Notes: generated from the letters alone by a model not told the origin. A DNA stretch of 64,000 nucleotides from Ostrea edulis (GCF_947568905.1 NC_079165.1:10664001-10728000), one strand, 5' to 3'; shown: positions 3,001 to 22,100, counted from the stretch's first letter. Translations and numbers: made by a program.

Positions 3001-6000
3001 GAGTTGGCCGAGACTGAAATCACTGAGGAACTGAAACCTACTGAAACACCCAAAGAGACCGTGGGTGTAGAAATCACAGCTGCTGAAACAGTGGAAAAGA
3101 AACCCACTGTTGAAATCCCCGTCAAAGAACAAGCAGATGTACAAATCGCTGTTGCTGCTGAGGAGACGGTGAGGGAAGAAGTCTCCATTGAAGCAGTGTC
3201 TAAAGAGCAACCCGAAATTGAAATGGTTGTGGAAATCCCAGAGGAGAAACCCTCTGCGGAAGTCAAAGCAGAACTGGGTGTGGACGAAACCCCGGAAGAG
3301 GTGAAGGAGGAAGTCGAGGCGGAGTTTGCTCCCTCCGACAAGGCAGCAGAGGAAGTGGGTGTTGAAATCGCACCTGAGGAAGCTGCCGAGTTGGCCGAGA
3401 CCGAAATCACTGAGGAACTGAAACCTACTGAAACACCCAAAGAGACCGTGGGTGTAGAAATCACCTCTGCTGAAACAGTGGAGTCACTGGAAGAGAAACC
3501 CACTGTTGAAATCCCCGTCAAAGAACAAGCGGCTGTACAAATCGCTGTTGCTGCTGAGGAGACGGTGAGGGAAGAAGTCTCCATTGAAGCAGTGTCTAAA
3601 GAGCAACCCGAAATTGAAATGGTTGTGGAAATCCCAGAGGAGAAACCCTCTGCGGAAGTCAAAGCAGAACTGGGTGTGGACGAAACCCCGGAAGAGGTGA
3701 AGGAGGAAGTCGAGGCGGAGTTTGCTCCCTCCGACAAGGAAGCAGAGGAAGTGGGTGTTGAAATCGCACCTGAGGAAGCTGCCGAGTTGGCCGAGACCGA
3801 AATCACTGAGGAACTGAAACCTACTGAAACACCCAAAGAGACCGTGGGTGTAGAAATCACAGCTGCTGAAACAGTGGAAAAGAAACCCACTGTTGAAATC
3901 CCCGTCAAAGTACAAGCAGATGTACAAATCGCTGTTGCTGCTGAGGAGACGGTGAGGGAAGAAGTCTCCATTGAAGCAGTGTCTAAAGAGCAACCCGAAA
4001 TTGAAATGGTTGTGGAAATCCCTGAGGAGAAACCCTCTGCGGAAGTCAAAGCAGAACTGGGTGTGGACGAAACCCCGGAAGAGGTGAAGGAGGAAGTCGA
4101 GGCGGAGTTTGCTCCCTCCGACAAGGCAGCAGAGGAAGTGGGTGTTGAAATCGCACCTGAGGAAGCTGCCGAGTTGGCCGAGACCGAAATCACTGAGGAA
4201 CTGAAACCTACTGAAACACCCAAAGAGACCGTGGGTGTAGAAATCACCTCTGCTGAAACAGTGGAGTCACTGGAAGAGAAACCCACTGTTGAAATCCCCG
4301 TCAAAGAACAAGCGGCTGTACAAATCGCTGTTGCTGCTGAGGAGACGGTGAGGGAAGAAGTCTCCATTGAAGCAGTGTCTAAAGAGCAACCCGAAATTGA
4401 AATGGTTGTGGAAATCCCAGAGGAGAAACCCTCTGCGGAAGTCAAAGCAGAACTGGGTGTGGACGAAACCCCGGAAGAGGTGAAGGAGGAAGTCGAGGCG
4501 GAGTTTGCTCCCTCCGACAAGGAAGCAGAGGAAGTGGGTGTTGAAATCGCACCTGAGGAAGCTGCCGAGTTGGCCGAGACCGAAATCACTGAGGAACTGA
4601 AACCTACTGAAACACCCAAAGAGACCGTGGGTGTAGAAATCACAGCTGCTGAAACAGTGGAAAAGAAACCCACTGTTGAAATCCCCGTCAAAGAACAAGC
4701 AGATGTACAAATCGCTGTTGCTGCTGAGGAGACGGTGAGGGAAGAAGTCTCCATTGAAGCAGTGTCTAAAGAGCAACCCGAAATTGAAATGGTTGTGGAA
4801 ATCCCTGAGGAGAAACCCTCTGCGGAAGTCAAAGCAGAACTGGGTGTGGACGAAACCCCGGAAGAGGTGAAGGAGGAAGTCGAGGCGGAGTTTGCTCCCT
4901 CCGACAAGGCAGCAGAGGAAGTGGGTGTTGAAATCGCACCTGAGGAAGCTGCCGAGTTGGCCGAGACCGAAATCACTGAGGAACTGAAACCTACTGAAAC
5001 ACCCAAAGAGACCGTGGGTGTAGAAATCACAGCTGCTGAAACAGTGGAAAAGAAACCCACTGTTGAAATCCCCGTCAAAGAACAAGCAGATGTACAAATC
5101 GCTGTTGCTGCTGAGGAGACGGTGAGGGAAGAAGTCTACATTGAAGCAGTGTCTAAAGAGCAACCCGAAATTGAAATGGTTGTGGAAATCCCAGAGGAGA
5201 AACCCTCTGCGGAAGTCAAAGCAGAACTGGGTGTGGACGAAACCCCGGAAGAGGTGAAGGAGGAAGTCGAGGCGGAGTTTGCTCCCTCCGACAAGGCAGC
5301 AGAGGAAGTGGGTGTTGAAATCGCACCTGAGGAAGCTGCCGAGTTGGCCGAGACCGAAATCACTGAGGAACTGAAACCTACTGAAACACCCAAAGAGACC
5401 GTGGGTGTAGAAATCACCGCTGCTGAAACAGTGGAGTCACTGGAAGAAAAACCCACTGTTGAAATCCCCGTCAAAGAACAAGCGGCTGTACAAATCGCTG
5501 TTGCTGCTGAGGAGACGGTGAGGGAAGAAGTCTCCATTGAAGCAGTGTCTAAAGAGCAACCCGAAATTGAAATGGTTGTGAAAATCCCAGAGGAGAAACC
5601 CTCTGCGGAAGTCAAAGCAGAACTGGGTGTGGACGAAACCCCGGAAGAGGTGAAGGAGGAAGTCGAGGCGGAGTTTGCTCCCTCCGACAAGGCAGCAGAG
5701 GAAGTGGGTGTTGAAATCGCACCTGAGGAAGCTGCCGAGTTGGCCGAGACCGAAATCACTGAGGAACTGAAACCTACTGAAACACCCAAAGAGACCGTGG
5801 GTGTAGAAATCACCGCTGCTGAAACAGTGGAGTCACTGGAAGAAAAACTCACTGTTGAAATCCCCGTCAAAGAACAAGCGGCTGTACAAATCGCTGTTGC
5901 TGCTGAGGAGACGGTGAGTGAAGAAGTCTCCATTGAAGCAGTGTCTAAAGAGCAACCCGAAATTGAAATGGTTGTGGAAATCCCAGAGGAGAAACCCTCT

Positions 6001-8222
6001 GCGGAAGTCAAAGCAGAACTGGGTGTGGACGAAACCCCGGAAGAGGTGAAGGAGGAAGTCGAGGCGGAGTTTGCTCCCTCCGACAAGGCAGCAGAGGAAG
6101 TGGGTGTTGAAATCGCACCTGAGGAAGCTGCCGAGTTGGCCGAGACCGAAATCACTGAGGAACTGAAACCTACTGAAACACCCAAAGAGACCGTGGGTGT
6201 AGAAATCACCGCTGCTGAAACAGTGGAGTCAGTGGAAGAGAAACCCACTGTTGAAATCCCCGTCAAAGAACAAGCGGCTGTACAAATCGCTGTTGCTGCT
6301 GAGGAGACGGTGAGGGAAGAAGTCTCCATTGAAGCAGTGTCTAAAGAGCAACCCGAAATTGAAATGGTTGTGGAAATCCCAGAGGAGAAACCCTCTGCGG
6401 AAGTCAAAGCAGAACTGGGTGTGGACGAAACCCCGGAAGAGGTGAAGGAGGAAGTCGAGGCGGAGTTTGCTCCCTCCGACAAGGCAGCAGAGGAAGTGGG
6501 TGTTGAAATCGCACCTGAGGAAGCTGCCGAGTTGGCCGAGACCGAAATCACTGAGGAACTGAAACCTACTGAAACACCCAAAGAGACCGTGGGTGTAGAA
6601 ATCACCGCTGCTGAAACAGTGGAGTCACTGGAAGAAAAACTCACTGTTGAAATCCCCGTCAAAGAACAAGCGGCTGTACAAATCGCTGTTGCTGCTGAGG
6701 AAACGGTGAGGGAAGAAGTCTCCATTGAAGCAGTGTCTAAAGAGCAACCCGAAATTGAAATGGTTGTGGAAATCCCAGAGGAGAAACCCTCTGCGGAAGT
6801 CAAAGCAGAACTGGGTGTGGACGAAACCCCGGAAGAGGTGAAGGAGGAAGTCGAGGCGGAGTTTGCTCCCTCCGACAAGGCAGCAGAGGAAGTGGGTGTT
6901 GAAATCGCACCTGAGGAAGCTGCCGAGTTGGCCGAGACCAAAATCACTGAGGAACTGAAACCTACTGAAACACCCAAAGAGACCTTGGGTGTAGAAATCA
7001 CCTCTGCTGAAACAGTGGAGTCACTGGAAGAGAAACCCACTGTTGAAATCCCCGTCAAAGAACAAGCGGCTGTACAAATCGCAGTTGCTGCTGAGGAGAC
7101 GGTGAGGGAAGAAGTCTCCATTGAAGCAGTGTCTAAAGAGCAACCCGAAATTGAAATGGTTGTGGAAATCCCAGAGGAGAAACCCTCTGCGGAAGTCAAA
7201 GCAGAACTGGGTGTGGACGAAACCCCGGAAGAGGTGAAGGAGGAAGTCGAGGCGGAGTTTGCTCCCTCCGACAAGGCAGTAGAGGAAGTGGGTGTTGAAA
7301 TCGCACCTGAGGAAGCTGCCGAGTTGGCCGAGACCGAAATCACTGAGGAACTGAAACCTACTGAAACACCCAAAGAGACCGTGGGTGTAGAAATCACCGC
7401 TGCTGAAACAGTGGAGTCACTGGAAGAGAAACCCACTGTTGAAATCCCGACCAAAGATCAAGCGGCTGTACAAATCGCTGTTGCTGCTGAGGAGACGGTG
7501 AGGGAAGAAGTCTCCATTGAAGCAGTGTCTAAAGAGCAACCCGAAATTGAAATGGTTGTGGAAATCCCAGAGGAGAAACCCTCTGCGGAAGTCAAAGCAG
7601 AACTGGGTGTGGACGAAACCCCGGAAGAGGTGAAGGAGGAAGTCGAGGCGGAGTTTGCTCCCTCCGACAAGGCAGCAGAGGAAGTGGGTGTTGAAATCGC
7701 ACCTGAGGAAGCTGCCGAGTTGGCCGAGACCGAAATCACTGAGGAACTGAAACCTACTGAAACACCCAAAGAGACCGTGGGTGTAGAAATCACCGCTGCT
7801 GAAACAGTGGAGTCAGTGGAAGAAAAACCCACTGTTGAAATCCCCGTCAAAGAACAAGCGGCTGTACAAATCGCTGTTGCTGCTGAGGAGACGGTGAGGG
7901 AAGAAGTCTCCATTGAAGCAGTGTCTAAAGAGCAACCCGAAATTGAAATGGTTGTGGAAATCCCAGAGGAGAAACCCTCTGCGGAAGTCAAAGCAGAACT
8001 GGGTGTGGACAAAACCCCGGAAGAGGTGAAGGAGGAAGTCGAGGCGGAGTTTGCTCCCTCCGACAAGGCAGCAGAGGAAGTGGGTGTTGAAATCGCACCT
8101 GAGGAAGCTGCCGAGTTGGCCGAGACCGAAATCACTGAGGAACTGAAACCTACTGAAACACCCAAAGAGACCGTGGGTGTAGAAATCACCTCTGCTGAAA
8201 CAGTGGAGTCATTGGAAGAGAA
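1..8222 (+). repeat. Coding tandem array: 20 complete units plus a partial one; 15 units of 396 bp (132 aa) and 5 of 387 bp (129 aa)
   Basis: Unit starts (gttgctgctgagga) at 1, 397, 793, 1189, 1585, 1981, 2377, 2764, 3151, 3547, 3934, 4330, 4717, 5104, 5500, 5896, 6292, 6688, 7084, 7480, 7876. Confidence 0.97.
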
Positions 8223-8434
8223 ATTCACGATTGAAAATGAGGAAACAGTTGTGAAAATTGCACCTGATTATGAAATATTGAATGTCTTGTCTAAATCTGA
8301 CCTAAATAAATCAAATAGGTCACATGATATGAGTGTGGTTGATAGTACAGATCAAGACTTTGATTTCAATTTAAAAGAAAACTTAATATCATCCAAAAAA
8401 GATAGTGTAAATGTGTCAGAAACTATACATGAGG
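1..8434 (+). CDS. Exon 1 (5' end outside window): giant Glu/Val/Ala/Pro/Thr-rich PEVK-like repeat exon
   Basis: Frame 1 is open from base 1. Donor GAG G|GTAAGG after 8434; alternative same-phase donor GAA G|GTATCA after 8506. Confidence 0.85.
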
Positions 8435-10123
8435 GTAAGGATGAAATGCCTTTTGAAAAATCGAGGTCAAGCGCTCAAACTCTGGGCTCTGAGAAGGGAG
8501 AAGAAGGTATCAAGCTGCTGTTGCAGTGGCTATTGCTTTGTTTAGGCAGCTTGGAAACGCTGATGAATATTAAATATGTTGGTTATATTCTTCATATTTA
8601 GTTGAATGCCATTTTTATTCATTACACTTTTAACTGAGTGTCATTCTATTCATTGCATGGCTTTTTATTTTTCAGTTGTTACATATAGTACATAGATTTG
8701 AATTTTTATTTTTATATGAATGGTTTGACATTAATCAGGATTCTTTTAAAGAAATTTAGCTCCTGCAGGCAATATTGTTGTTCTTATTTACAAAATAATA
8801 ATTATTATAGTGTTCTTTGAACAGTTTGGATTTACTTTCATTTATTGATGAACTGTTTTCTATGCATGACATTGCATGTACTATCTTCTGGGTGTATACA
8901 TTTTTTCAAAATTTCAAAAATATTTCTGATTTTAGAAAAACATAAGAAATCATCTTTGTTAGTAAAATTAGTATTTTATGCCAGGAAGATTTTATGGTTT
9001 TGGTAATGTAGAATTTTATTTAGGAATCAAGAAAACATAAGCAGGGTTGGAATGGATCAAAGAGGTTTTGAAAATAGAGTAATAGGTTAAACATAAACAA
9101 CCACCAAAAGTTTACAGAAACTAGATACCCATAGAAACAGATTTTAGATTTCTTACTAGCTTTAGACTGGTTGTACAAATTCACTGCATTAGATTCTTAA
9201 GATAACAAAAGTCTAGAACAACTTGACTTTTATATACTCAAACTTGTTAAATTAGAAGAAATACTGTTTGAAAAGGTCATTTCATTCCTCCCTTTACTTG
9301 GCTTTATTATAAACTGTAGTCCTTTCTTAAAGACATAGTTACATTACAAAGTCTTTATCTTTTAAAATGTTGATAAACTGCTCAGTGGATTAAGGTCTTA
9401 GGTTAGCCATTTGTAGACCATGAGCCCGAGTCTAGCAGGGTTAGCTCAGTGAATTAAAGCATTAGGTTAGCAATCTGTGGACCATGAGCCCGAGTCTAGC
9501 AGGGCCTTTGATTTCTCTGTCTGTTTTTACACTGAAATTGCAGTGTTTCGTGAAGTAAGGTAGATTTGGATTTTACAATAACCATAAGGTTATTATATAC
9601 ATACCTTATAGTTTTTGTCGGTTATAATTTTCTTTGGTGTGTAATTCCTTCATACCATACATGTTTTAAAAGTAGGATTGACCACTCAGGGGCTCATTGT
9701 CCACATTTAATTATACCTATCGGAATAGGGTCAAGCAGTTTCATTACATTTTACTTTTTATTTTCATTCATTTTTCTATTGGTTTGTATAATATTTTGTA
9801 TATTTACTAACAATTGATACCTATGAACAGTTTTCAATCAAAAGTGAAAGATAGATATCATATTTATATTACCTTAGTTTTAGATTGCAGTGATGTAGAT
9901 AGCAGAGTTTAATTTATTTATATTAATGTATGCAAAGTTTATACTTATTCTGTTAGCAGAGAAAACTTTTTTTCTTGATTATTTTTTTGTAGTTTTGATT
10001 TCTTTTTATTAAAAGTAATATTTGATTTTCAATATTTTCAGAAAAACATGTTGAACACATTGATACTGAGTTTACCTTGAAAGATACATTATCTGAGAAA
10101 GAAAAACAATATGGTGTGTATAT

Positions 10124-10165
<42 letters not shown>

Positions 10166-13100
10166 GAGCCTGAAATTTTCGGTTTTGAATATGAGTGATC
10201 TTCTTTCACCTTGACCTTGTTTCTTGCAGAAGAGGAGAAGGAATCAACTTCAGATGAAGACAAAATACAGTCTCCAACTCCTTTTGGTGATTTCATTTTT
10301 ATCCAATGGAAATATTATTTTGCTCCTGATATATGAACAATTTTACTTACTTAGAATAATGTTGGGTTTTTTTTTCATTTTTTTTTAATATATTGGTTTC
10401 ATTTGTTTTTGAATAGTTGTGGAAGAAAAAGTAGAGAAACAAGCACCAGTGGTAATCTCCCCTTTGAAGAGCCTCCATTCCTCCGACGGAGAAGAGGCCC
10501 GTCTGGAATGTCAGATCACTGGATCACCCAAACCAACTGTCACCTGGTACAAAGAAGGCCAGGTCATCGTTAATTCTGAGGAGTTTAAAATATTCTATGA
10601 TGAAAACAATCTGTGTTCTCTCTTCATATCTGATGTCTATCCTGAGGATGCTGGGAAATATTCTTTGGTGGCTCAGAATGAACTTGGCACTGCTGAAACA
10701 ACAGCTGAGCTCTTTGTGGCAGGTATGCAACACTACAAAGATTTCTTGTTTCTGTTACATGAATCGGTCTATTTCCAAGAAAACTAAGTATTGAGATGCA
10801 TATTTAATTCTATAATGACATTATTGTTGGGGTAGCTCTCGAAAGTTATTTATTTCCGTTTCAGCACCAGATGAAATTTTGGAGGATGACTCTATTGCCC
10901 CAGCTTTCACACAAAAACCGAAATTCCAGACTGCCTCCATCAGTGAAACTGTGACCTTTGAGGCTACTGTTGTAGCTAACCCACAACCAGAAATTCGGTG
11001 GTCCAGGGAAAACACTGAATTAGTTCCAACTGACAAAGTGAAAGTGACAATCGATCAGAATGGCAACATCTATCACACCACGCTGACTCTGTCAGAGGTA
11101 GACGCAGAAGACGCGGGGACATTCAAAGTTCTGGCCACAAATGACCAGGGTGAAGCCAGCATCTCAGTCTCTCTGCTTGTCAAAAGTAAGTCTTCGTGAA
11201 AGAAAGATAGAAATAAAGAACATCTAAAATTCACATCCATGAGTGTGTCTAGCTACTAAATTTTTTTCTGTGTATTTCAGAACCAGAGGGACCACAAAGG
11301 GTTGACTTCAGAGACTCATTAACAACAGAAGTGTAAGCATCATTTAGTACTTTTATTTTTATCATATACCAAGAGGTTCCTTATGATAAAATTACAGAGT
11401 AACAAGAGAATATTTATGGAATTAATTCTTTTTATATTCAATACAGAGAATGAGTGTGATCCACAAGTCCATTAGTCAGAGTGCATGTGTCAGTGGACTT
11501 GTGACTTGTTTGATTCCTGGTTCTGTAGATTCCTTACTTTATATGAGTACTTAACAGCACAAAATTACCCGTAGACGTTAAATCGAAAGAACAAGAATTC
11601 ATCAGTGAACTGTTCATCAAGAGTTTTTACATGTAATTCAGCAATATAGAATTAAAAACTAGTCATTTTATTCCATGAATAGTGCTTCTCGCTATATTAT
11701 GCTACAATTAATTTCCCTCATATATTTAGGAATCTACAGTAACACATCTTTTTGCAATAAGTCCCATTTATATTTCAATTGTCAGTTTTCCAAGCATGAT
11801 TTTGAACCGTGTTGAAGATTTTAGAACAGATGCATCTTCTGTTTTGAAAAAATCAAAGTGTTGAATTTGAAATTTCTTTCTACCAGTACAGAATTGGATA
11901 TTAATTAGAATTTGCTATCTACTAATGATTATGAATTTCAACCATTGTTAACATGTTCTTTGCTTTTGACCTCTGCATGACCTTATTTCCTCGCTTACCC
12001 TGTACACAGGCAGACTAAGGTGGGCATTAAATATCAGGCAGAACAGATGGACTTCAGAACGCTATTAAAATCCACTTCAGTCAAGTCCAAGTAAGTTTTC
12101 GTCCCAAAAAAAAAATTTTTAAAAATAATATTTTTTATACTTAGTTTAATTAACCCCAGGAGATTAGGTACAGGTTTGCAACAAAAGCTGTTATCAAATT
12201 GTTTTATCTGGATATACATGGCATTACTTTATATTTGTGTAAAATGAAGCAGTAATATTTCTACTGGAAACCAACCAATGAAATGCATCCAAATGTCTCT
12301 TTCTCTTTTTGCATGGTGTTTGATAATGGCATGATCAGTTTGAGAGCATGTTTCACCATCTCACTAAGACTTCCACGCCTGATGTTTTTGTGTTTCTTCA
12401 TTTTAACAGGAAATTCTCACAGGAAGTTACAGAAGAAACTACCCAAGAAATTGTAGAAACTGAACAAGTGGACTTCCGGGAAGTGTTGAAAAAGGTCAGT
12501 GCTGAAAACAAAGTGTGGAAAGTGTTGCTGAATCGGACTTCTTCCAAAAATTGTTTTGCTGAAGCATCAATCCTATTTATACCCCCCGAATGAAGTTCTG
12601 GGGGGTATATAGGAATCACTCTGTCCGTCCGTCCGTCCGTCCGTCCGTCCGTCCGTCCGTCTGTCTGTCTCCAGATTCGTGTCCGGGCCATAACTTCTTT
12701 GTTCTTTGACATAGGCATACCATATTTGGCACACAGGTGGATCACCATGAGACGATGTGTCTGGTACCTTCATGACCTCTATATGACCTTACCCTTGACC
12801 TTAATGTCAAAATTAAATGTTTTTTTACAATGGATTCGTGTTTGGGCCATAACTTCTTTGTTCTTTGACATAGGCATACCATATTTGACACATGAGTGTA
12901 TCACCATGAGACGATATGTCATGTACCTTCATGACCTCCATATGACCTTGACCTCAAGGTCAAAATTAAACATTTTTACAATGGATTCATGTCAGGGCCA
13001 TAACTTCTTTGTTCTTTGACATAGGCATACCATATTTGATACATGAGTGTATCACCACGAGACAATGTGTCATGTACCTTCATGACCTCCATATGACCTT

Positions 13101-16100
13101 GACCTCAAGGTCAAAATTAAACGTTTTTACAATGGATTCGTGTCAGGGCCATGACTTCTTTATTCTTTGACATAGGCATACCATATTTGACACATGAGTG
13201 TATCACCATGAGACGATGTGTCAGGTACCTTCATTACCTCTATATGACCTTGAACTTTCACCTCAAGGTCAAAATTGATTATAGGGTTTTGACATAGTCA
13301 TACCATAAGACATGGATGTATCACCATGAGACTATGTGTCATGTACATTCATGACCTCTTTATGACCTTGACCTTTGATCTCAAGGTCAAAATTATAGGT
13401 TTATACCATGGATTTGTGTTCGCACTATATCTTCCATTTTCTTCTACAAAGGCATACTATATTTTTACACTCAGGAAAGAGGTAATTTATGCCTATTAAC
13501 AACACCCTTTGGGAGATTGGGGTAAGCAGGGGGCATTCTTATTGAGCATTGCTCACAGTACCTCTTGTTTGTTTTAAAAGTGCCTGTTCTTTTTGGTGCC
13601 AAAGTCTTCTGAAACTATCAGGTTAAAAGCATTCATTGTAAGTTATACTGATATGATGGCATAATTATTAGTGATCAATTATGCAAAGAAAAAGGGAAGA
13701 AAAATATATATTCATAATGAAAAATAGAAACATCTTTAAAATATCCTCAATCATTCCACAAATCACAGTTACATCAGTGGATCCAAGATATCACAAAAGG
13801 ATAATCAAATGAAGGTTCAGACAATGTTTTTATGTTATTGCAATGAAACTTGAAAGAAAAATGGTATGATAGAAAACCCATGGGTTGCCCCCCCCCCCCC
13901 CCCCCCCCCCCCCTCTCTCTTAAAATTGCTTAGCTGGTGGGTGCAGGCTAGGCCCACACTCCTGAATTTTGCATAGAATATAAGAAGAAAGAAATCGGTT
14001 CTGAATAACATGATTATGGGTTCCTGTAGATCTATTTCAGCATTAAATACATTGCAATATATGAATCTAACTCTTTCAGGAATAAAAATTTGAACAAACG
14101 TTACTTTATTTTCATTACATCAGTTTTACATCCTGTCCTCAAGCATCCTCAAACATCTACAAGTACATGTACATATATATAAAGCAACTTCTGATCTTGA
14201 CACTACTTGTATGAATTTAATCATTTATGTTTGACCGCAATCTAAATCTACATGAACTTATTGCAGACTGTCACTTCACCACAATTTGTTGTCATTATTG
14301 AGGACCTCAAAACTGAGGAAGGCTCTGAGGCAAAATTCATGGTCAAGGTTCGAGGTGAACCAACTCCAGAGGTCATGTGGTTCCATGAGAACGAACCAAT
14401 CAAAGACGATGACATCTACAAGATCATGGCTGGTGAGGAGGGTGAAGTAGTCCTGTATCTGCCTGAGGTGTTCATAGAGGATGCCGGTGTATACACGGTG
14501 AAAGCTGTCAATGAGGCCGGCGAAGTCTCCTGCTCAGCAATCCTCACAGTTCTTCAAGGTGAGTTGATTTACTCATTGAGTTTGTAGCATACCTGTAAAT
14601 CAGAAAGCACCAAAGAGATAGAAGTGGAGGAAACGCCTTCTGTATAATGGGTATTTCCTGCAGGTGGAAATTTTGTGACTTGATGATCCCAAGATATATT
14701 CTGCATTTCCAATTTCTGCAGTTGCAATATACCTATATATTCTTATAGGTATATTGCAAGTTTTATTTTTGTGGATTTTTCCTGTCTGCAAAATTCCACA
14801 CAAAAAATGGACAACCACAGAAAATACCCATAATGCAATATTTTGGAATGTTGTATATTCATGAACTTTCACCCTTAGGGAGGAAAGAAACATTATCTTG
14901 AAAGTTTAGAAATTGATGAAAAATATCTTAAGTATTTTAGAAATTGTTGAGGGAAGATTACCCATTCTTCATTTTGCAGAGGAGCTGGAAGATACAGAAG
15001 ACATCAAGGAGACACCTAAAGCAGAGTCAATCGAGGAAACACCTGCGAAACCGTTCACAATGCCAGATGCTGAACAACTGGACTTCAGAGCTGTACTCAA
15101 AAGCAAAGTGTAAGTTCTGTTTTATCATGCTTTATCTTTAGTTATAGTATTAACAAATCACCAAGTATCCTTATTATATTCAGAGTATTGACTATGATAC
15201 TACATTATTGTATTTTTGTAATGTTATCAAGAGATGTAAATTTAAGATTTTCTATCCTTATTTTAATATGAATCATTTGATTGTATAGCATACAGCATGC
15301 CTCCCATGTAAAAATGTCACTGTATGCTCTTCTTTGCATGCAATTTATAGCAAGACCAAATCGAACGAGAGCTTTGAAACTGAACAGCTGGATTTTAGAA
15401 GTGCGCTTAAAACTAAAGTGTAAGTCATACCCGGTGATGGAATCTGTGATGAATTTTCTGAATGATTGTCATTTTTTGAGTTTTATTGACCAGCTAAAGT
15501 TAAATATTTCATAAACAACTCTCTGTTCCTCATCAGGAAAACAAAGGCAAACCAAGAATTTGAGTCAAAACAACTCGACTTCCGAGGTGCTCTCAAATCA
15601 GAGCATGTGTAAGTTTCCTCGTTAAACTCTTAATCCTGTGGATTGTATTGGGATAAAACTGTCAGTTAATTTTTTTTTGTAAATCAATCTGTAACAGTTT
15701 TTGGCTTGTTTTGTATTCATACTCCCACAATTAACAACAGTAGATATACATATAAGACATATATTCCTCCTTTGACAGTGTGCCATTTAACAGATTTTGG
15801 ACTAACAACAGCCTTCAGTTTTGTACATATACTTATAGCATGCTTACATTATGTATATTCTAACAGACAAACCAAAGTGAACCAACAGTTTGCGCATGAA
15901 CAGTTGGACTTCCGAGATGCTATCAAAGCTCGCCATGTGTAAGTCAACCACTGTTCTGGTTAGGTGTACTGTTGTCATTTAATCTAGACGTTTAAAAAAG
16001 ACGAAAAATAATCCATGTTAAGAAGTGTGTAGGCAGGGGACAATTTTTTACTGAGTGTAACACTGACTTGGCTAGGAGGAGATAAATATTATCATCAAAG

Positions 16101-19100
16101 GTCATGATAAGCTTATACACGCATGAAATAGTTTGATCACATCATAAGATGTTCATGCAGTGCATGGTATGTGTTTTGCATGTCTTCCAGGGAAACTAAA
16201 GTCAACCAGCAGTTCCGGCATGAACAGTTAGATTTTAGAGAAGTCTTAAAAACAGAGACTGTGTAAGTACCACTAAGAGTGTGTGAGATTGTTGTATTAA
16301 GATGTGTAAGTACCATTTACAGTGTGTGAGATTGTTGTATTGAGATGTGTAAGTACCATTCACAGTGTGTGAGATTATTGTATTGAGATGTGTAAGTACC
16401 ACTAAGAGTGTGTGAGATTGTTGTATTGAGATGTGTAAGTATCATTCACAGTGTGTGAGATTGTTGTATTGAGATGTGTAAGTACCACTAAGAGTGTGTG
16501 AGATTGTTGTATTGAGATGTGTAAGTACCATTCACAGTGTGTGAGATTGTTGTATTGAGTTCTTCATTTGAATGACACCTTTTAATGCATGCTGTCTGCT
16601 TTTGCATGTTCACAGTGAGACCACATTTAATCAACAATTTCCTCATGAGCAGCTGGATTTCAGATCAGTACTCAAAGCCGACCGGTAAGGCACAGTGAGA
16701 GGGGTCTATTGTAAGACTACAGTGAGAGGGGTCTGTTGTAAGACTGCTGTTTAAGTCTGTAATTCTGACAATAACATGTGCCCAATCTTCTGTTTGCAGT
16801 GAATCCAGTGAAGAAATCACCCAAGAAGAGACTGTCATTGAGGTTTCCAAGAAACCAGAGGAGGAGGTACCTCAGGTGTCCCAGATAGAGGAAGTAGAAC
16901 TGGTGGCTCCTAAATTTATCACCAGAATTGACGACATCAAAGTGGAAGAAGGAGAAGAGGTCAAGTTTATTGCCAAGGTCACAGGCACACCCACTCCTGA
17001 GGTCACATGGCACCATGACAATGAGGTCATCAAAGAAGACAGTGATATATACAAAGTGTTGCCAGGAGAGGAAGGGGAGGTCACTCTATTGCTTACAGAG
17101 GCCTTTCCTGAGGATTCGGGTGTTTACACTGTCACTGCCTCAAATGCCGTCGGACGGGCGGAATGTACAGCCATGCTGACTGTCTCTGGTAAGCAATTAA
17201 CGCATTCATTTGCATTTTAGGTATAAGGATATCTATTTCAGAAAGTGGATTACTAAAATGACAGTGTCTCTTTCTGTAGAATTAATTGAAGATGAAGAAC
17301 AGGTTCCAGAAGAACAAGTTGAGTTGATTGAAAGCAAAGAAATTATTAAAGAGGAGGCAGCTGTCAAAATACAGGCAATGTTCCGAGGATACAAGGTTTG
17401 CATTTACAAACTACACCAGTGATATCACACATGTAGAAACATTTACACATCACACCAGTGATATCACACATGTAGAAACATTTACACATCACACCAGTGA
17501 TATCACATGTAGAAACATTTACACATCACATCAGTGATATCACACATGTAGAAACATTTACACATCACACCAGTGATATCACACATGTAGAAACATTTAC
17601 ACATCACACCAGTGATATCACATTTATAAACATTTACACATCACACCAGTGATATCTCATGTAGAAACATTTACACATCACACCAGTGATATCACATGTA
17701 TAAACATTTACACATCACACCAGTGATATCACACATGTAGAAACATTTACACATCACACCAGTGATATCACATGTAGAAACATTTACACATCACACCAGT
17801 GATATCACACATGTAGAAACATTTACACATCACACCAGTGATATCACATATATAAACATTTACACATCACACCAGTGATATCACATGTATAAACATATAC
17901 ACATCACACCAGTGATATCACATGTATAAACATATACACATCACACCAGTGATATCACACATGTAGAAACATTTACACATCACACCAGTGATATCACATA
18001 TATAAACATTTACACATCACACCAGTGATATCACACATGTAGAAACATTTACACATCACACCAGTGATATCACACATGTAGAAACATTTACACATCACAC
18101 CAGTGATATCACACATGTAGAAACATTTACACATCACACCAGTGATATCACATGTAGAAACATTTACACATCACACCAGTGATATCACACATGTAGAAAC
18201 ATTTACACATCACACCAGTGATATCACACATGTAGAAACATTTACACATCACACCAGTGATATCACACATGTAGAAACATTTACACATCACACCAGTGAT
18301 ATCTCATGTAGAAACATTTACACATCACACCAGTGATATCACACATGTAGAAACATTTACACATCACACCAGTGATATCACACATGTAGAAACATTTACA
18401 CATCACACCAGTGATATCACATGTAGAAACATTTACACATCACACCAGTGATATCACACATGTAGAAACATTTACACATCACACCAGTGATATCACACAT
18501 GTAGAAACATTTACACATCACACCAGTGATATCACACATGTAGAAACATTTACACATCACACCAGTAATATCACATGTAGAAACATTTCTATCCTAGCAT
18601 CAAGTCCAACATCACATCAACATGTGTTTTTATAACCGTGAAATGGTCAGGGTATATGGCGTTATCCTTTTCTGTCCATCATTTCATCACTTTGTCATTC
18701 TGCTCTTGTGTCATTCCATCATAGTTTTCCAGACTGTTATATTCTAATTTTGTTTCATTTCCTTTCAGTGTTATTTTCACATTATTGGACTATCAAACTT
18801 GAATATCAGCGGGGGGCATTTATGTCATACTGATCCTTTGTTGAACTGAGTCATAATGAGCTTGCAAATTTATTAATTTAACAGGCCAGAGAGGAGGTAA
18901 AGGACATGAAAGAGACCAAGGAACAGCAGGAAGTTCCCACATTTGAAGCTGATACGACCTTTGACATTAGTGACATCAGCACTGACACAGAGATTACAGC
19001 TCATCTTCCTAGAGAAGACCAATCACAGGATACACAGGTAGGTCATGACCTCTGTCACATGCACAGTCCAATGTCATCAATTATATACTCTAAAAATCAT

Positions 19101-22100
19101 TTCATAAGTGTATCCTGAGCACTAATCATATCAAACAGATAAAAGAGATTTTAAAGAGATTATCTTTAATACAAGTGAAATTTTTTTGATTGACTAATGA
19201 TTTCTTTAAAAAATATCAAAACTTAACTCTGAGCACTTAGAATGTAGAATAATCTAGTACTTGTCAAACTGATAGTATATATCAGCAGGTTAAATTCTCA
19301 GTGTAGTACTAGTATAGTTGTAGATGTTTTAACGATATCTAGTAAACAACATATCTGTATTATAATTAATCAGCAACAGAGATGTAAACTAAGTAGGAAA
19401 TCATTTTTGTTGAGCTAAGTTTGAAATGGAAGTTTTAATTGGCTGATGCGCACAAGTTTTAACATTATGGATGATTTAACAATTAAAAGCTAACATAACG
19501 ATTAAATCAAGAGTAGCTATCTTAACATAAATAATCAGGGCTCTAATTGAGTAACTTTCAATAGCTGGAGCTGCAAATACTTGTAGGTGATGGCTAACTA
19601 ATTCTGTAAATGTTTTGGTTTGGCTAGATTTTCCCAACATATACTCGATTTTATTTTCATAAGCATGGATTGCTAAAAAAAATTTATTTTGTTTGATGTC
19701 AGAGAAAGTTTTATTCAAAACTCTGCAACTGAAAGTTGGCATGACAATTTTGGCATGAATATTTTTGTTCTTTAAAATTTTACCCCAGAATGTTTAACTT
19801 TGCAAACATTTGACTGCAAAGCAATAATCACCAATGGTATGAACAAGAAGGCAACACAAAAAAATTAAAACTTTGGTTTATGATTTGATTAATCATTGTT
19901 GCTTTCTTGTTCTGTATATGTTTGCAGCTGTCTGCATGGTTAGCCGTAATTGTTTATTAGTGTTTGTTTACCACCTCACAGCAGCATTTGCATGCACACA
20001 GCAGCAATGACTACGATGTAGGCACTAAAGTCTATACCTGGAGGCTAGAGAGCACACCTCAAGACAGCTTTCCTCAATATGACACTTATTTGTTCAAGGA
20101 GGAACTTATTGTTACTGGCTCAGAGAGTGAGGATCAAGGATATCTTCCATCTGATGAGGAAGGTGAAAGGACCAAGACTGCAGAGGATGAAACTTCCACC
20201 TGGCATATAACAGGGGAAGAAGAAGAACCTCCTGCACTGCCTTCCACATCTGCTCCGGAGCTTACAACAGACTCCACTCTGCTCTCCAGCAGACCCGATA
20301 GGACATCAGAGGACTTCACATCCATACCAAGCTCCACTATACCCGAGGGCACAGATGAAGCATTCACTTTTGTAACAGCAGAAGATCTTCCAGAAAAACC
20401 TGTTGAGGAAGAGTTTACCATTCTCAGCAAGGAGGATATTCCACCTCTAGATCTTCAACTGGGAATTTCATCTTCTGATGAAAAAGAGGGATCTGAAAAA
20501 TCCTACCCTGAGGACTTCACTAGTTCTGATGAGGATGACAGCTCAGCTGAAAAACGTCTAGCAACTGAGGAAGAAAAGAAATTACTTGCCAAGCAAGATG
20601 GAATAGAAAAAGACAAAATTCCTCAAGAGAAACAAGACACAGGCGAAAGATCAGAGGAGTCTTCAACTTCAGAAGAGTCTGAAGGAGAAGATGGCTTTGT
20701 GAAACCTTCAATGCCAGACATTGTTCCCAAAGATTCCAACATTCTTGACAGGAGTTTTTCAAGTGAATCTGATGAAGAAGAGAAAGAACAAATAAAAGTT
20801 AAAGGTGTTCCATTACCTGATGGTTACAAAATGCCAAAAGCATCTTCACAGAAGGAAATTTCAGTGCCTGAAAAAGAACTTGAACAGCATCTCATTGAGG
20901 AGGAAATTGTTGTTCCATCAGAGGACAAACCAGATTTTGCAGGTCAAGTGATATCAGAAAAAGACACCATTCTTCAATTGGATAAGAATATCAAGGACAA
21001 ATTTGAGGGTTTCATTGAGGAAGGAAAAGATCATGGACCAACATCTATGGTGGACAAGGTCAGTCTTTGGGATGAGGAAAGTGAGGATGAAGAAAGAAAA
21101 CTTGTCCGAAAATTCTCTCCATTTGAAAAGTCAATGGATGAGCAACCTGTGAGTGATATCATCATTGAGGAAAATGAGGAAGATGCAATTAAACCTGATT
21201 TCAAACAGCAGGTTTCATTAGAGGAGAGTCAACCACCAGAGGCTGGGTTAATCACCCAAAAAGATTTGAAGGAAGGTGGTAAAGAAGGAAATAAGGAGTT
21301 GGTGGATCTATCTTTTGACAAGCTGTTGCAATCACCCACAGAAATGTCAGAAGAAAGAGAAATTGAGGAAGAATTTGAACAGCCTGAGTTGTATCAAAAG
21401 GACAGCTTTGCTCCAGAATTTGAAGTCAAACCGAAGGACATTTTCCATGCTGAACAGTATGATCTGTTTAGAGGTGTGCCAGAAAGAGATGAAGATTATG
21501 AGGAAGTTAGCATTGAGGAGGAAGAAATCATTGAGGAGGAAGAGGTTCACGATGAATTCATGGGTAGAGAATACATACTAGAGAATATTCCAGAAGAGGA
21601 GTCATTTGAAACTTCAGAGAATGAGGGATATACAGGAGAGGACCAACAGCTGAGCCCTGAGGAAACACGAACGAAACCAAGCAAAGATCAAACTTCTGAG
21701 GTAGGCCATTAACATAGAAGTGTAGCTTAGACAAATCAGAGGGTGGTTAGAGGATTCAGACAAAGGCAGCAAAACACTCACACAAATACCAATTAGTAGA
21801 TATTAACATCAGTCTCTTTGGTAAGTATTGTACAGATATATATTCATGTGTATTCCAGATATATAATGTGTATAAATATATATACGTCTTCACAAAGCTT
21901 TGGCTTATATCACTGTTTTGTCTTTTAACCTTCAAACAAATGGCCCTCAAGCATAATCTCTGTCCTCCCTGTATGTGTTTATTCAAATGTTCCATTATGT
22001 ATACATTTTTGTGATTATAATTGACTTTCAGGTATTTTCAGAAACATTAAGCATGAAATGATCCCTATTTTGAACAGCAGTATGAATAGATAGAGGGTGG

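What the first reader, a model, noticed from the sequence alone, without database searches (positions are those of the whole stretch)
11281..16684. Nine DFRxxL actin-binding motifs, one per short exon, with six skippable in frame
Seen: DFRDSL, DFRTLL, DFREVL, then Ig 3, then DFRAVL, DFRSAL, DFRGAL, DFRDAI, DFREVL, DFRSVL, with consensus (E)Q(L/V/M)DFRxxLK. Each motif has its own 52-130 nt exon. Six exons are phase 2-2 and 69-81 nt long, and no skip junction creates a stop, so 3 to 9 motifs (64 combinations) are possible. Motif spacing in the second cluster is 23-24 aa. Ig 3 and Ig 4 are clear paralogues, so a motif-array-plus-Ig module was duplicated. Known: DFRxxL is the F-actin-binding motif of smooth-muscle myosin light chain kinase (three copies, five in the long form), and as I recall one copy is reported in Mytilus twitchin. 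Inference: a splice-tunable thin-filament anchor, possibly relevant to catch versus striated adductor muscle. The ORF track shows only fragments of it.
Basis: partly seen in the sequence, partly recalled or inferred. Interest (0 to 1): 0.9.

Follow-up and report, generated by a model that had tools for sequence, protein, structure and literature searches.

The report
Nine actin-anchor motifs on separate exons
A giant titin-like muscle gene of a bivalve carries nine copies of the short motif that myosin light chain kinase uses to bind actin filaments, each on its own tiny exon. Six of these exons can be left out without breaking the reading frame, and most of those six have conserved splicing-control signals beside them, so the protein's grip on thin filaments may be adjustable.

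Summary
Nine DFRxx[L/I] motifs lie on the + strand between 11304 and 16673. Shuffles of that stretch give 0.28.

- **Exons:** each motif has its own exon (52, 81, 85, 130, 69, 72, 72, 72, 69 nt) with AG/GT sites. With Ig1-Ig4 and the IQ exon they splice into 708 aa without a stop.
- **Skippable exons:** six exons (M2, M5-M9) are phase 2-2, and no skip junction can make a stop.
- **Selection:** M5-M9 have one-to-one orthologues in a related species and M7-M9 in a second, with pN/pS about 0.1.
- **Kinship:** the extended consensus EQ[LVM]DFRxxLK and the Ig-Ig-array-Ig order match deuterostome MLCK proteins.
- **Origin:** Lottia and two other mollusc proteins have one module (3-4 motifs, Ig, IQ). 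Lottia DNA has no room for a second, so M4-M9 plus Ig4 is a lineage-specific expansion.
- **Splicing signals:** The M5, M8 and M9 sites recur in the relatives, and Lottia's M2-type exon has one too.

No transcript could be found, and actin binding is inferred. The gene looks titin-like, not twitchin.

The parts
10417..10722 (+). Ig1 exon (I-set), phase 1-1
   Evidence: Pfam I-set E 2e-26. Splice sites. Colinear with Lottia P0135 and P0114.
10865..11185 (+). Ig2 exon (I-set), phase 1-1. It lies directly upstream of the first motif, as in MLCK-like proteins.
   Evidence: Pfam I-set E 2e-19. Splice sites.
11281..11332 (+). M1: 52-nt exon, phase 1-2, peptide PEGPQRVDFRDSLTTE
11974..11979 (+). TGCATG 36 nt upstream of the M2 acceptor
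   Evidence: Lottia's M2-type exon has TGCATG 13 nt upstream of its acceptor (motif at L014 5931-5936) and five more within 663 nt.
12010..12090 (+). M2: 81-nt exon, phase 2-2, peptide QTKVGIKYQAEQMDFRTLLKSTSVKS. It is the prototype of the M5-M9 exon class.
   Evidence: An exon of about the same size and position (about 81 nt) exists in Lottia DNA. Exactly this exon is missing from P0173 and P0221.
12410..12494 (+). M3: 85-nt exon, phase 2-0, acidic lead-in followed by EQVDFREVLKK
14267..14558 (+). Ig3 exon (I-set), phase 0-1, paralogue of Ig4
   Evidence: Pfam I-set E 2e-22. 59% identical to Ig4.
14980..15109 (+). M4: 130-nt exon, phase 1-2, acidic lead-in followed by AEQLDFRAVLKSK
15335..15340 (+). 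TGCATG 16 nt upstream of the M5 acceptor, inside the pyrimidine tract
   Evidence: Present at the same place in L001.
15351..15419 (+). M5: 69-nt exon, phase 2-2, DFRSAL
   Evidence: Orthologue in L001.
15537..15608 (+). M6: 72-nt exon, phase 2-2, DFRGAL
   Evidence: The orthologue in L001 has TGCATG upstream; the window does not.
15838..15843 (+). GCATGC (core GCAUG) about 25 nt upstream of the M7 acceptor
   Evidence: Conserved in L001.
15867..15938 (+). M7: 72-nt exon, phase 2-2, DFRDAI
   Evidence: Orthologues in L001 and L002.
16161..16182 (+). Two TGCATG, 30 and 14 nt upstream of the M8 acceptor
   Evidence: Two copies in L002; one copy plus a GCATG in L001.
16191..16262 (+). M8: 72-nt exon, phase 2-2, DFREVL
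16586..16608 (+). Two TGCATG, 30 and 13 nt upstream of the M9 acceptor
   Evidence: Two copies in each of the window, L001 and L002.
16616..16684 (+). M9: 69-nt exon, phase 2-2, DFRSVL
16800..17188 (+). Ig4 exon: 35-aa acidic linker plus I-set domain, phase 2-1
   Evidence: Pfam I-set E 2e-23. 81-84% identical genomic ORFs in related species.
17280..17395 (+). Exon holding the first half of an IQ motif (AAVKIQAMFRGYK), directly after the second module
   Evidence: The same IQ follows the single module in P0114, P0135 and P0173.

Best explanation
The region encodes two arrays (3 + 6) of the MLCK-type DFRxxL motif. They sit between Ig domains in the elastic, I-band-like part of a giant titin-like muscle protein of a bivalve. 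Upstream lies a spring exon of at least 20.9 copies of a 132-aa unit. Downstream lie an IQ motif, an acidic exon, a second spring exon, and then Ig/Fn3 repeats.

**Shown here**
- The exons are real and under purifying selection.
- The motif and its flanks are homologous to the actin-binding repeats of MLCK.
- The ancestral mollusc module is Ig-Ig, 3-4 motifs, Ig, IQ.
- In this lineage the module was extended by M4, five M2-type exons (M5-M9) and Ig4.
- Of the six phase 2-2 exons, M2, M5, M8 and M9 carry TGCATG 13-36 nt upstream of their acceptors. M7 carries the GCATG core and M6 carries none in this window.

**Inferred**
- Each motif binds one actin protomer, as in MLCK. The 23-24-aa spacing would let six motifs follow one long-pitch strand. 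The protein would then be tethered to the thin filament with an avidity set by the number of motifs.
- An Rbfox-type factor bound at UGCAUG inside the branch-point and pyrimidine-tract region would block 3' splice-site recognition. It would cause skipping of M2, M5, M8, M9 and possibly M7, so muscles with different factor levels would make anchors of different valency.
- The neighbouring IQ motif may add calmodulin control.
For: - **Enrichment:** nine motifs against 0.28 expected.
- **Gene model:** canonical splice sites and matching phases give 708 aa without a stop.
- **Orthology and selection:** M5-M9 are one-to-one in L001 and M7-M9 in L002. Amino-acid identity is 0.82-0.85 and pN/pS 0.09-0.11, with synonymous sites saturated and introns unalignable.
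- **Profile test:** an HMM built only from the window's motifs picks out the DFR-bearing proteins among the ~210 mostly Ig-rich proteins fetched by then. It matches (A)EQ[LVIM]DFRxxL(K), and V.TK in lamprey MLCK.
- **Colinear alignments:** 42-44% over 400-450 aa to Lottia XP_009049556 and P0114. Also 27-31% to DFR-bearing relatives: the crinoid MLCK-like P0102, the starfish MLCK-like P0050 and the unnamed Logan protein P0053.
- **MLCK biology:** the motif binds F-actin, one kinase per three actin monomers for three motifs (PMC2196421). The three motifs lie within 75 residues (PMC4586593).
- **TGCATG:** found within 40 nt upstream of 4 of the 6 phase 2-2 exons, against 2.8% of random 40-nt windows (P 9e-6). 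A crude control gives 1 of 26 domain exons. The sites upstream of M5, M8 and M9 are conserved in L001 and L002, and Lottia's M2-type exon has one too.
- **Rbfox rule:** the factor binds UGCAUG and acts by position, also in invertebrate muscle (PMC8742874).
- **Missing exon:** P0173 and P0221 lack exactly the M2-type exon.
- **Junctions:** all skip junctions stay open.
Against: - No spliced transcript or isoform of this gene was obtained. All relatives found were genomic ORFs and a metagenome scan was blank.
- Eight of the nine donors are GTAAG (five of them the full GTAAGT), as constitutive exons often are.
- M6 has no TGCATG in this window, and M7 has only the GCATG core.
- In such short introns the same elements lie 220-340 nt downstream of the preceding exon, where Rbfox sites usually promote inclusion.
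- TGCATG also sits at the acceptors of the acidic exon near 20000 and of one Fn3 exon, at 56536.
- The period is 23-24 aa, not the 28-32 aa of the MLCKs fetched.
- The arrays are near neutral or acidic (net -1, -7 and +1), against +3 to +7 in vertebrate MLCK arrays.
- No kinase lies in the window.
- Actin binding is an inference from homology.
Confidence: 0.55

Rival explanations
1. The array is constitutive. All nine exons are always spliced in. The small symmetric exons are only the trace of tandem exon duplication. The UGCAUG elements either help muscle cells recognise very short exons or act on neighbouring exons, without producing variable motif numbers.
For: Donors are near consensus. 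Each of M5-M9 is kept one-to-one, with pN/pS about 0.1. The Lottia and P0114 models include the M2-type exon. TGCATG is also found at acceptors of exons not expected to be cassettes.
Against: The elements sit inside the 3' splice-site region, the position associated with repression. They are conserved while the rest of the introns is unalignable. Lottia's M2-type exon lies in a cluster of six TGCATG within 663 nt. P0173 and P0221 lack exactly that exon.
Confidence: 0.27
2. M5-M9 are mutually exclusive exons. One of five similar 69-72-nt exons is chosen per transcript, so the second array always has two motifs (M4 plus one variant) and the variants differ in fine binding properties.
For: The exons are tandem duplicates of equal phase and almost equal length, a pattern common among mutually exclusive exons (established knowledge).
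Against: Exon lengths are multiples of three, so nothing enforces exclusivity. The introns (about 115-350 nt) are long enough for consecutive splicing. No conserved docking or selector complementarity was found, only chance-level inverted repeats. In MLCK the motif works as a tandem array.
Confidence: 0.06
3. The motif here is not an actin anchor. DFRxxL(K) after an Ig domain is an old linker motif of the titin/twitchin/MLCK superfamily with some other partner or a structural role, and the expansion serves that role.
For: Single DFRxxLK motifs follow an Ig domain in twitchin-like proteins of a crinoid, a hemichordate and a mosquito, and in vertebrate titin fragments. For none of these do I know of a demonstrated actin-binding role (memory only). 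The charge is less basic than in vertebrate MLCK.
Against: The only experimentally defined function of the motif is F-actin binding in MLCK. The flanks and domain order here match MLCK.
Confidence: 0.12

Closest known systems
N-terminal DFRxxL actin-binding repeats of smooth-muscle/non-muscle myosin light chain kinase (MYLK)
   Same: Same hexapeptide. Same preceding (A)EQ-hydrophobic residues and following basic residue. Regular tandem spacing. Same position after an Ig domain and before another Ig domain. Colinear alignment with MLCK-like proteins. The motif binds one actin monomer each in MLCK.
   Different: Nine motifs instead of three to five. Period 23-24 aa instead of 28-32. Split by an Ig domain into 3 + 6. 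Near-neutral charge. Embedded between spring segments of a titin-like giant, with no kinase in the 64 kb. One exon per motif here; the exon structure of the vertebrate repeats was not examined.
Titin PEVK exons (one roughly 28-aa PPAK motif per short symmetric exon, differentially spliced) and nebulin actin-binding modules (from established knowledge, not tested here)
   Same: One short repeat per small phase-symmetric exon in a giant sarcomeric protein, which allows isoforms with different repeat numbers. In nebulin, one module binds one actin monomer.
   Different: The sequence family is different. The DFR exons are Q/K/E/T-rich, not P/E/V/K-rich. Differential splicing is demonstrated for titin and nebulin and only inferred here.
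Single DFRxxLK motif of twitchin/projectin-type proteins
   Same: A motif of the same form directly after an Ig domain, for example LDFRSLLKHR in Anneissia twitchin-like and MDFRAMLKKR in Anopheles twitchin.
   Different: One copy, not an array. It is a different gene: this genome's twitchin is noted on another piece (unchecked).
Rbfox-regulated cassette exons
   Same: (U)GCAUG elements close to small symmetric exons of a muscle structural gene, conserved across species while the surrounding intron is not. Position-dependent action is documented in fly muscle.
   Different: Neither binding nor regulated inclusion has been shown here. The elements could act on the upstream or the downstream exon because the introns are short.

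Membership tests
MLCK-type DFRxxL actin-binding repeat | Hexapeptide D-F-R-x-x-L | tested here: met
   Eight of nine are DFRxxL and one is DFRDAI. Nine observed against 0.28 expected.
MLCK-type DFRxxL actin-binding repeat | Shared flanks beyond the hexapeptide: (A)EQ plus a hydrophobic residue before the motif, a basic residue after it, and V.TK in the spacer | tested here: met
   An HMM built from window motifs M2-M9 matches these flanks in lamprey, Komodo dragon, crinoid and starfish MLCK or MLCK-like proteins. Its significant hits are confined to DFR-bearing proteins among the ~210 mostly Ig-rich proteins in the set.
MLCK-type DFRxxL actin-binding repeat | Regular tandem spacing (28-32 aa in the MLCKs fetched here) | tested here: inconclusive
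   The spacing is regular but shorter: 23, 23, 24, 24 and 24 aa in the second array, and 23 and 34 aa in the first.
MLCK-type DFRxxL actin-binding repeat | Array placed between Ig domains in the order Ig-Ig-array-Ig | tested here: met
   Colinear BLASTP alignments with the crinoid and starfish MLCK-like proteins and with the unnamed DFR-bearing Logan protein P0053. In these and in mollusc proteins the first motif follows an Ig domain directly.
MLCK-type DFRxxL actin-binding repeat | Same polypeptide carries an MLCK-type kinase domain | not testable with these tools
   There is no kinase in the 64-kb window, which ends in Ig/Fn3 exons. The rest of the gene was not available. Pecten maximus has a separate MLCK-like gene with one motif.
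MLCK-type DFRxxL actin-binding repeat | DFR-dependent binding to F-actin, one motif per actin monomer | not testable with these tools
   This needs co-sedimentation or electron microscopy. It is known only for vertebrate MLCK.
Rbfox-regulated cassette exon | (U)GCAUG in the flanking intron close to the exon | tested here: met
   TGCATG lies 13-36 nt upstream of M2, M5, M8 (two copies) and M9 (two copies), and GCATGC upstream of M7. P 9e-6 against random windows.
Rbfox-regulated cassette exon | Element conserved across species | tested here: met
   The sites upstream of M5, M8 and M9 recur at the same places in L001 and L002, although the introns are otherwise unalignable. Lottia's M2-type exon has TGCATG 13 nt upstream of its acceptor and five more nearby.
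Rbfox-regulated cassette exon | Exon observed both included and skipped | not testable with these tools
   No transcript-derived sequence of this gene was found. The only hint is that the M2-type exon is absent from P0173 and P0221.
Twitchin | About 0.5-MDa protein with Fn-Fn-Ig repeats and one kinase, and without large spring repeats | tested here: not met
The window holds a 396-nt x 20.9 tandem-repeat exon running off its start, and a 135-nt x 12.2 repeat exon.
Titin PEVK-type modular exons | One repeat per short exon with symmetric phase | tested here: met
   M2 and M5-M9 are 69-81 nt and phase 2-2.
Titin PEVK-type modular exons | P/E/V/K-rich composition | tested here: not met
   The peptides are Q/K/E/T/F-rich with an invariant DFR.

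The most novel reading that the evidence does not exclude
A titin-like spring protein carries a splice-set valency dial for the thin filament. An Rbfox-type factor sets how many of up to nine MLCK-type actin-binding motifs are included in each muscle type. The adjacent IQ motif lets calcium-calmodulin release or engage the tether. This would give bivalve muscles an adjustable titin-to-actin link that contributes to passive stiffness or catch-like force holding independently of twitchin.
Probability: 0.2. Interest if true: 0.8.

Novelty: new variant of a known kind. Interest (0 to 1): 0.62.

Why it matters
How giant elastic proteins engage the thin filament is an open question in muscle mechanics, and so is what holds force cheaply in bivalve muscle.

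It lies inside a titin-like spring, in an exon layout that permits graded copy number, and it carries conserved splicing-control elements.

This makes a concrete hypothesis directly testable with RT-PCR and co-sedimentation. It also shows that the DFRxxL-after-Ig motif is shared by MLCK, twitchin-like and titin-like proteins across bilaterians. None of the seven papers in the searched library that name the motif treats invertebrates.

Tried and rejected
- **Transcript evidence.** All three word-indexed protein searches returned only genomic ORFs of this gene from relatives or from the same species. The queries were the Ig4 exon, Lottia P0135 residues 55-500, and the 582-aa acidic exon. The metagenome scan with Ig4 was blank. 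L013 is simply the same genome.
- **Representative search.** It ranks by summed Ig matches, so it gave no bivalve full-length protein. It was still useful as a panel for motif counting.
- **Literature on DFRXXL in twitchin.** No paper in the library holds both terms. Funabara 2003, Funabara 2007 and Butler 2010 are not held. One search with match 'anywhere' was wasted on 'twitching'.
- **Run accessions.** They did not lead to a species name.
- **Ig4 linker as a decayed M3 copy.** The similarity is not above composition: 433 of 2000 shuffles reach the score.
- **Ig tree to date the duplication.** It is unresolved. Only the pairwise identities favour a lineage-specific copy.
- **Docking or selector RNA pairing for mutually exclusive splicing.** Nothing beyond chance-level inverted repeats.
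- **Upstream exons in another mollusc.** The contigs L006-L012 reach only 348 nt upstream of the Ig exon and hold no motif.
- **Rfam scan of 10000-19500.** No match.

Full report
**Observation**

A six-frame scan finds DFRxx[LIVM] nine times on the + strand, at 11304, 12050, 12471, 15081, 15391, 15577, 15907, 16231 and 16656. Only three further matches occur in the remaining 58 kb, over all six frames. Shuffling 11281-16684 gives a mean of 0.28 and never more than 2 in 300 trials.

Each motif lies in a short open stretch bounded by a pyrimidine-rich AG acceptor and a GTAAG or GTCAG donor.

| Exon | Coordinates | Length (nt) | Phase |
|---|---|---|---|
| M1 | 11281-11332 | 52 | 1-2 |
| M2 | 12010-12090 | 81 | 2-2 |
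| M3 | 12410-12494 | 85 | 2-0 |
| M4 | 14980-15109 | 130 | 1-2 |
| M5 | 15351-15419 | 69 | 2-2 |
| M6 | 15537-15608 | 72 | 2-2 |
| M7 | 15867-15938 | 72 | 2-2 |
| M8 | 16191-16262 | 72 | 2-2 |
| M9 | 16616-16684 | 69 | 2-2 |

The phases fit the neighbouring I-set exons: Ig1 10417-10722, Ig2 10865-11185, Ig3 14267-14558 and Ig4 16800-17188. They also fit the exon 17280-17395, which starts an IQ motif. Joined, the fourteen exons read 708 aa without a stop.

Motif spacing is 23, 34, 139, 23, 23, 24, 24 and 24 aa. The donors of the phase-2 exons end in GT, AA or CG, so every conceivable skip junction encodes Val, Lys, Asn or Arg and never a stop.

**Are these real exons?**

The Ig4 exon found genomic ORFs at 81-84% identity in sequencing runs of related species. 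Their contigs carry the neighbouring motif exons. L001 has orthologues of M5, M6, M7, M8 and M9 in the same order. L002 and L004 have M7, M8 and M9.

- Amino-acid identity across the motif exons is 0.85 (L001) and 0.82 (L002).
- pN/pS is 0.09 and 0.11, with synonymous sites saturated (pS about 0.8).
- BLASTN aligns only the exons and some 30 nt upstream of them. The rest of the introns does not align.

Each of these small exons has therefore been kept individually by selection over a long divergence.

**What the motif is**

In the held literature DFRXXL occurs only in papers on vertebrate MLCK.

- There are three copies in the short kinase and five in the long one. Saturation is at one kinase per three actin monomers, and binding is lost on mutation (PMC2196421).
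- The three copies lie within 75 residues, and the domain can diffuse along actin (PMC4586593).

Among 150 Ig-rich proteins returned by an exhaustive search with Ig4, tandem clusters of the motif occur in named MLCK or MLCK-like proteins of lamprey, Komodo dragon, a crinoid and a starfish. They also occur in three mollusc-type proteins and in two unnamed entries, P0053 and P0065.

In most of the invertebrate proteins (molluscs, starfish, crinoid, P0053, P0065) the first motif follows an Ig domain directly, for example SLIVNKTQEEKT-DFRDQL and VSVVVHALEEEQT-DFRQLL.

A profile built only from the window's M2-M9 units retrieves just the DFR-bearing proteins from the ~210 proteins fetched by then. 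It matches (A)EQ[LVIM]DFRxxL(K) and, in lamprey MLCK, the V.TK of the spacer.

The window's Ig1-Ig2-array-Ig3 aligns colinearly with the crinoid and starfish MLCK-like proteins and with the unnamed P0053, at 27-31%. I take the motif arrays to be homologous to the MLCK actin-binding repeats. Actin binding itself is an inference.

**Origin of the second array**

Lottia XP_009049556 (P0135) and P0114 align with Ig1-Ig2-M1-M3-Ig3 at 42-44% over 400-450 aa. A second alignment places their single post-array Ig and the following IQ motif on the window's Ig4 and IQ.

In Lottia genomic DNA:
- The M2-type exon is about the same size and in the same place (about 81 nt).
- Motifs 1 and 2 share one exon.
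- Only 348 nt separate the Ig exon from the IQ exon.
- No further motif is present.

The second module is therefore truly absent there, not merely unannotated.

Ig3 and Ig4 are 59-60% identical to each other, 43-58% to the single Ig of the other molluscs, and 32-39% to Ig1 and Ig2. The tree does not resolve the order of events. M5-M9 match M2 in phase, in size and in full register, QTKV...EQxDFR...K...V.

The simplest history is a duplication of the array-plus-Ig module followed by amplification of the M2-type exon.

**What gene this is**

- Upstream of Ig1 lies an open exon that runs off the window start: 396 nt x 20.9 copies at 97% identity, which is a 132-aa E/P/V/K/A-rich unit.
- Downstream come a 582-aa acidic exon, more Ig exons, a second repeat exon (135 nt x 12.2, E/T/P/V-rich), and then Ig/Fn3 exons.
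- No kinase lies in the window.

This is the layout of a titin/sallimus/TTN-1-like protein, not of the roughly 0.5-MDa twitchin. An earlier, unchecked note places this genome's twitchin on another piece. Pecten maximus has a separate MLCK-like gene with one motif.

The arrays thus sit between two spring segments, next to an IQ motif.

**Is the number of motifs regulated?**

I could not obtain transcripts, so the evidence is indirect.

*In the window.* TGCATG lies 36 nt upstream of the M2 acceptor and 16 nt upstream of M5. It lies 30 and 14 nt upstream of M8, and 30 and 13 nt upstream of M9. None lies upstream of the other eight exons of the region.

*Against controls.* Only 2.8% of random 40-nt windows of the non-repeat DNA hold the hexamer, which gives P = 9e-6 for 4 of 6 exons. 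Counting M8 and M9 as one gives 2e-4. A crude control finds it at 1 of 26 domain-exon acceptors.

*In relatives*:

| Exon | Window | L001 | L002 |
|---|---|---|---|
| M5 | TGCATG | TGCATG, same place | exon not on contig |
| M6 | none | TGCATG | exon not on contig |
| M7 | GCATGC | GCATGC | upstream intron cut off |
| M8 | two TGCATG | one TGCATG plus GCATG | two TGCATG |
| M9 | two TGCATG | two TGCATG | two TGCATG |

*In Lottia.* The M2-type exon has TGCATG 13 nt upstream of its acceptor, another a few nucleotides past the donor, and six within 663 nt, out of thirteen in 17.5 kb.

*Known biology.* UGCAUG is the Rbfox binding element. Its effect depends on whether it lies upstream or downstream of the exon, and Rbfox1 shapes fibre-type isoforms of structural genes in fly muscle (PMC8742874).

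*Reading.* Elements embedded in the branch-point and pyrimidine-tract region would be expected to hinder 3' splice-site recognition. This rests on established knowledge of Rbfox-repressed exons and was not tested here.

*One more hint.* P0173 and P0221, close relatives of P0114, read LQTEV|KFATD. They lack exactly the M2-type exon that P0114 has between those residues.

**What speaks against tuning**

- Eight of the nine donors are GTAAG, five of them the full GTAAGT.
- M6 has no element in this window.
- In introns this short the same elements lie 220-340 nt downstream of the preceding exon, where they would usually enhance inclusion.
- The hexamer also sits at the acceptors of the acidic exon and of one Fn3 exon.

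Mutually exclusive use of M5-M9 is possible in principle. However, nothing enforces it: the lengths are multiples of three, the introns are 115-350 nt, and no selector pairing was found.

**Differences from MLCK**

- The period is shorter: 23-24 aa, against 28-32 in the MLCKs fetched here.
- The arrays are near neutral or acidic, against a mildly basic charge in vertebrates.
- An Ig domain divides the motifs into 3 + 6.

Twenty-four residues can still span the 5.5-nm actin repeat if largely extended. That is an inference from geometry.

**Verdict**

- The homology to the MLCK actin-binding repeats and the module duplication hold.
- Splice tuning is plausible and now has conserved cis-elements behind it, but it is unproven.
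- The twitchin association does not apply to this gene.

This is a new variant of a known kind: an expanded array of the MLCK motif, one exon per motif, inside a titin-like spring.

Noticed in passing
window 16255-16559: A minisatellite of 43 nt x 7.1 copies starts inside the 3' end of M8 and repeats its donor (GTGTAAGTACC) seven times. The relatives lack it: the M8-to-M9 motif distance is 167 nt in L001 and 186 nt in L002, against 425 nt here. An in-frame TAA sits at the intron start, so any later copy used as donor would bring in a stop.
   Followed up: partly
window 1-8223 and 46159-47808: There are two giant tandem-repeat coding exons. The first is 396 nt x 20.9 copies at 97% identity (a 132-aa E/P/V/K/A-rich unit) and runs off the window start. 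The second is 135 nt x 12.2 copies at 92% (a 45-aa E/T/P/V-rich unit). Both look like PEVK-like springs flanking the actin-motif region. Neither has a Pfam match.
   Followed up: partly
window 17280-17395 and 18874-19043: An IQ motif (AAVKIQAMFRGYK) follows Ig4 directly and is split by an intron that holds a 39-nt x 31 minisatellite (17401-18588). The same IQ follows the single module in Lottia, P0114 and P0173. The block at 18874-19043 is conserved at 82-84% in the relatives.
   Followed up: partly
P0013 residue 1659, P0015 residue 1886, P0103 residue 1113 (vertebrate titin or titin-like fragments): Vertebrate titin fragments carry one DFRSVL or DFRAVL directly after an Ig domain and before a P/E/K-rich stretch (QQRE-DFRSVL-RRAPEPK). 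The motif after an Ig domain therefore seems common to titin, twitchin and MLCK.
   Followed up: no
L014 5590-6253 (Lottia gigantea KB200919.1): Six TGCATG within 663 nt surround the Lottia M2-type DFR exon, out of 13 in 17.5 kb on that strand. The opposite strand has only 3.
   Followed up: partly
window 19933-19994: Two TGCATG lie just upstream of the probable acceptor of the 582-aa acidic exon. That exon may also be under the same kind of control. Ten more TGCATG cluster at 24.6-27.5 kb. Over the whole window the hexamer is strand-biased: 45 on the + strand and 24 on the - strand.
   Followed up: no
window 12623-13394: The intron between M3 and Ig3 holds a (GTCC)n run and a 151-nt tandem repeat (3.8 copies, 90%). 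This looks like a repetitive-element insertion. Its ORFs on both strands are spurious.
   Followed up: no
P0173 975-1035 versus P0114 2901-2990: Two related mollusc proteins differ by exactly the M2-type exon. In P0173 the last motif has also decayed to DFTAVL.
   Followed up: partly
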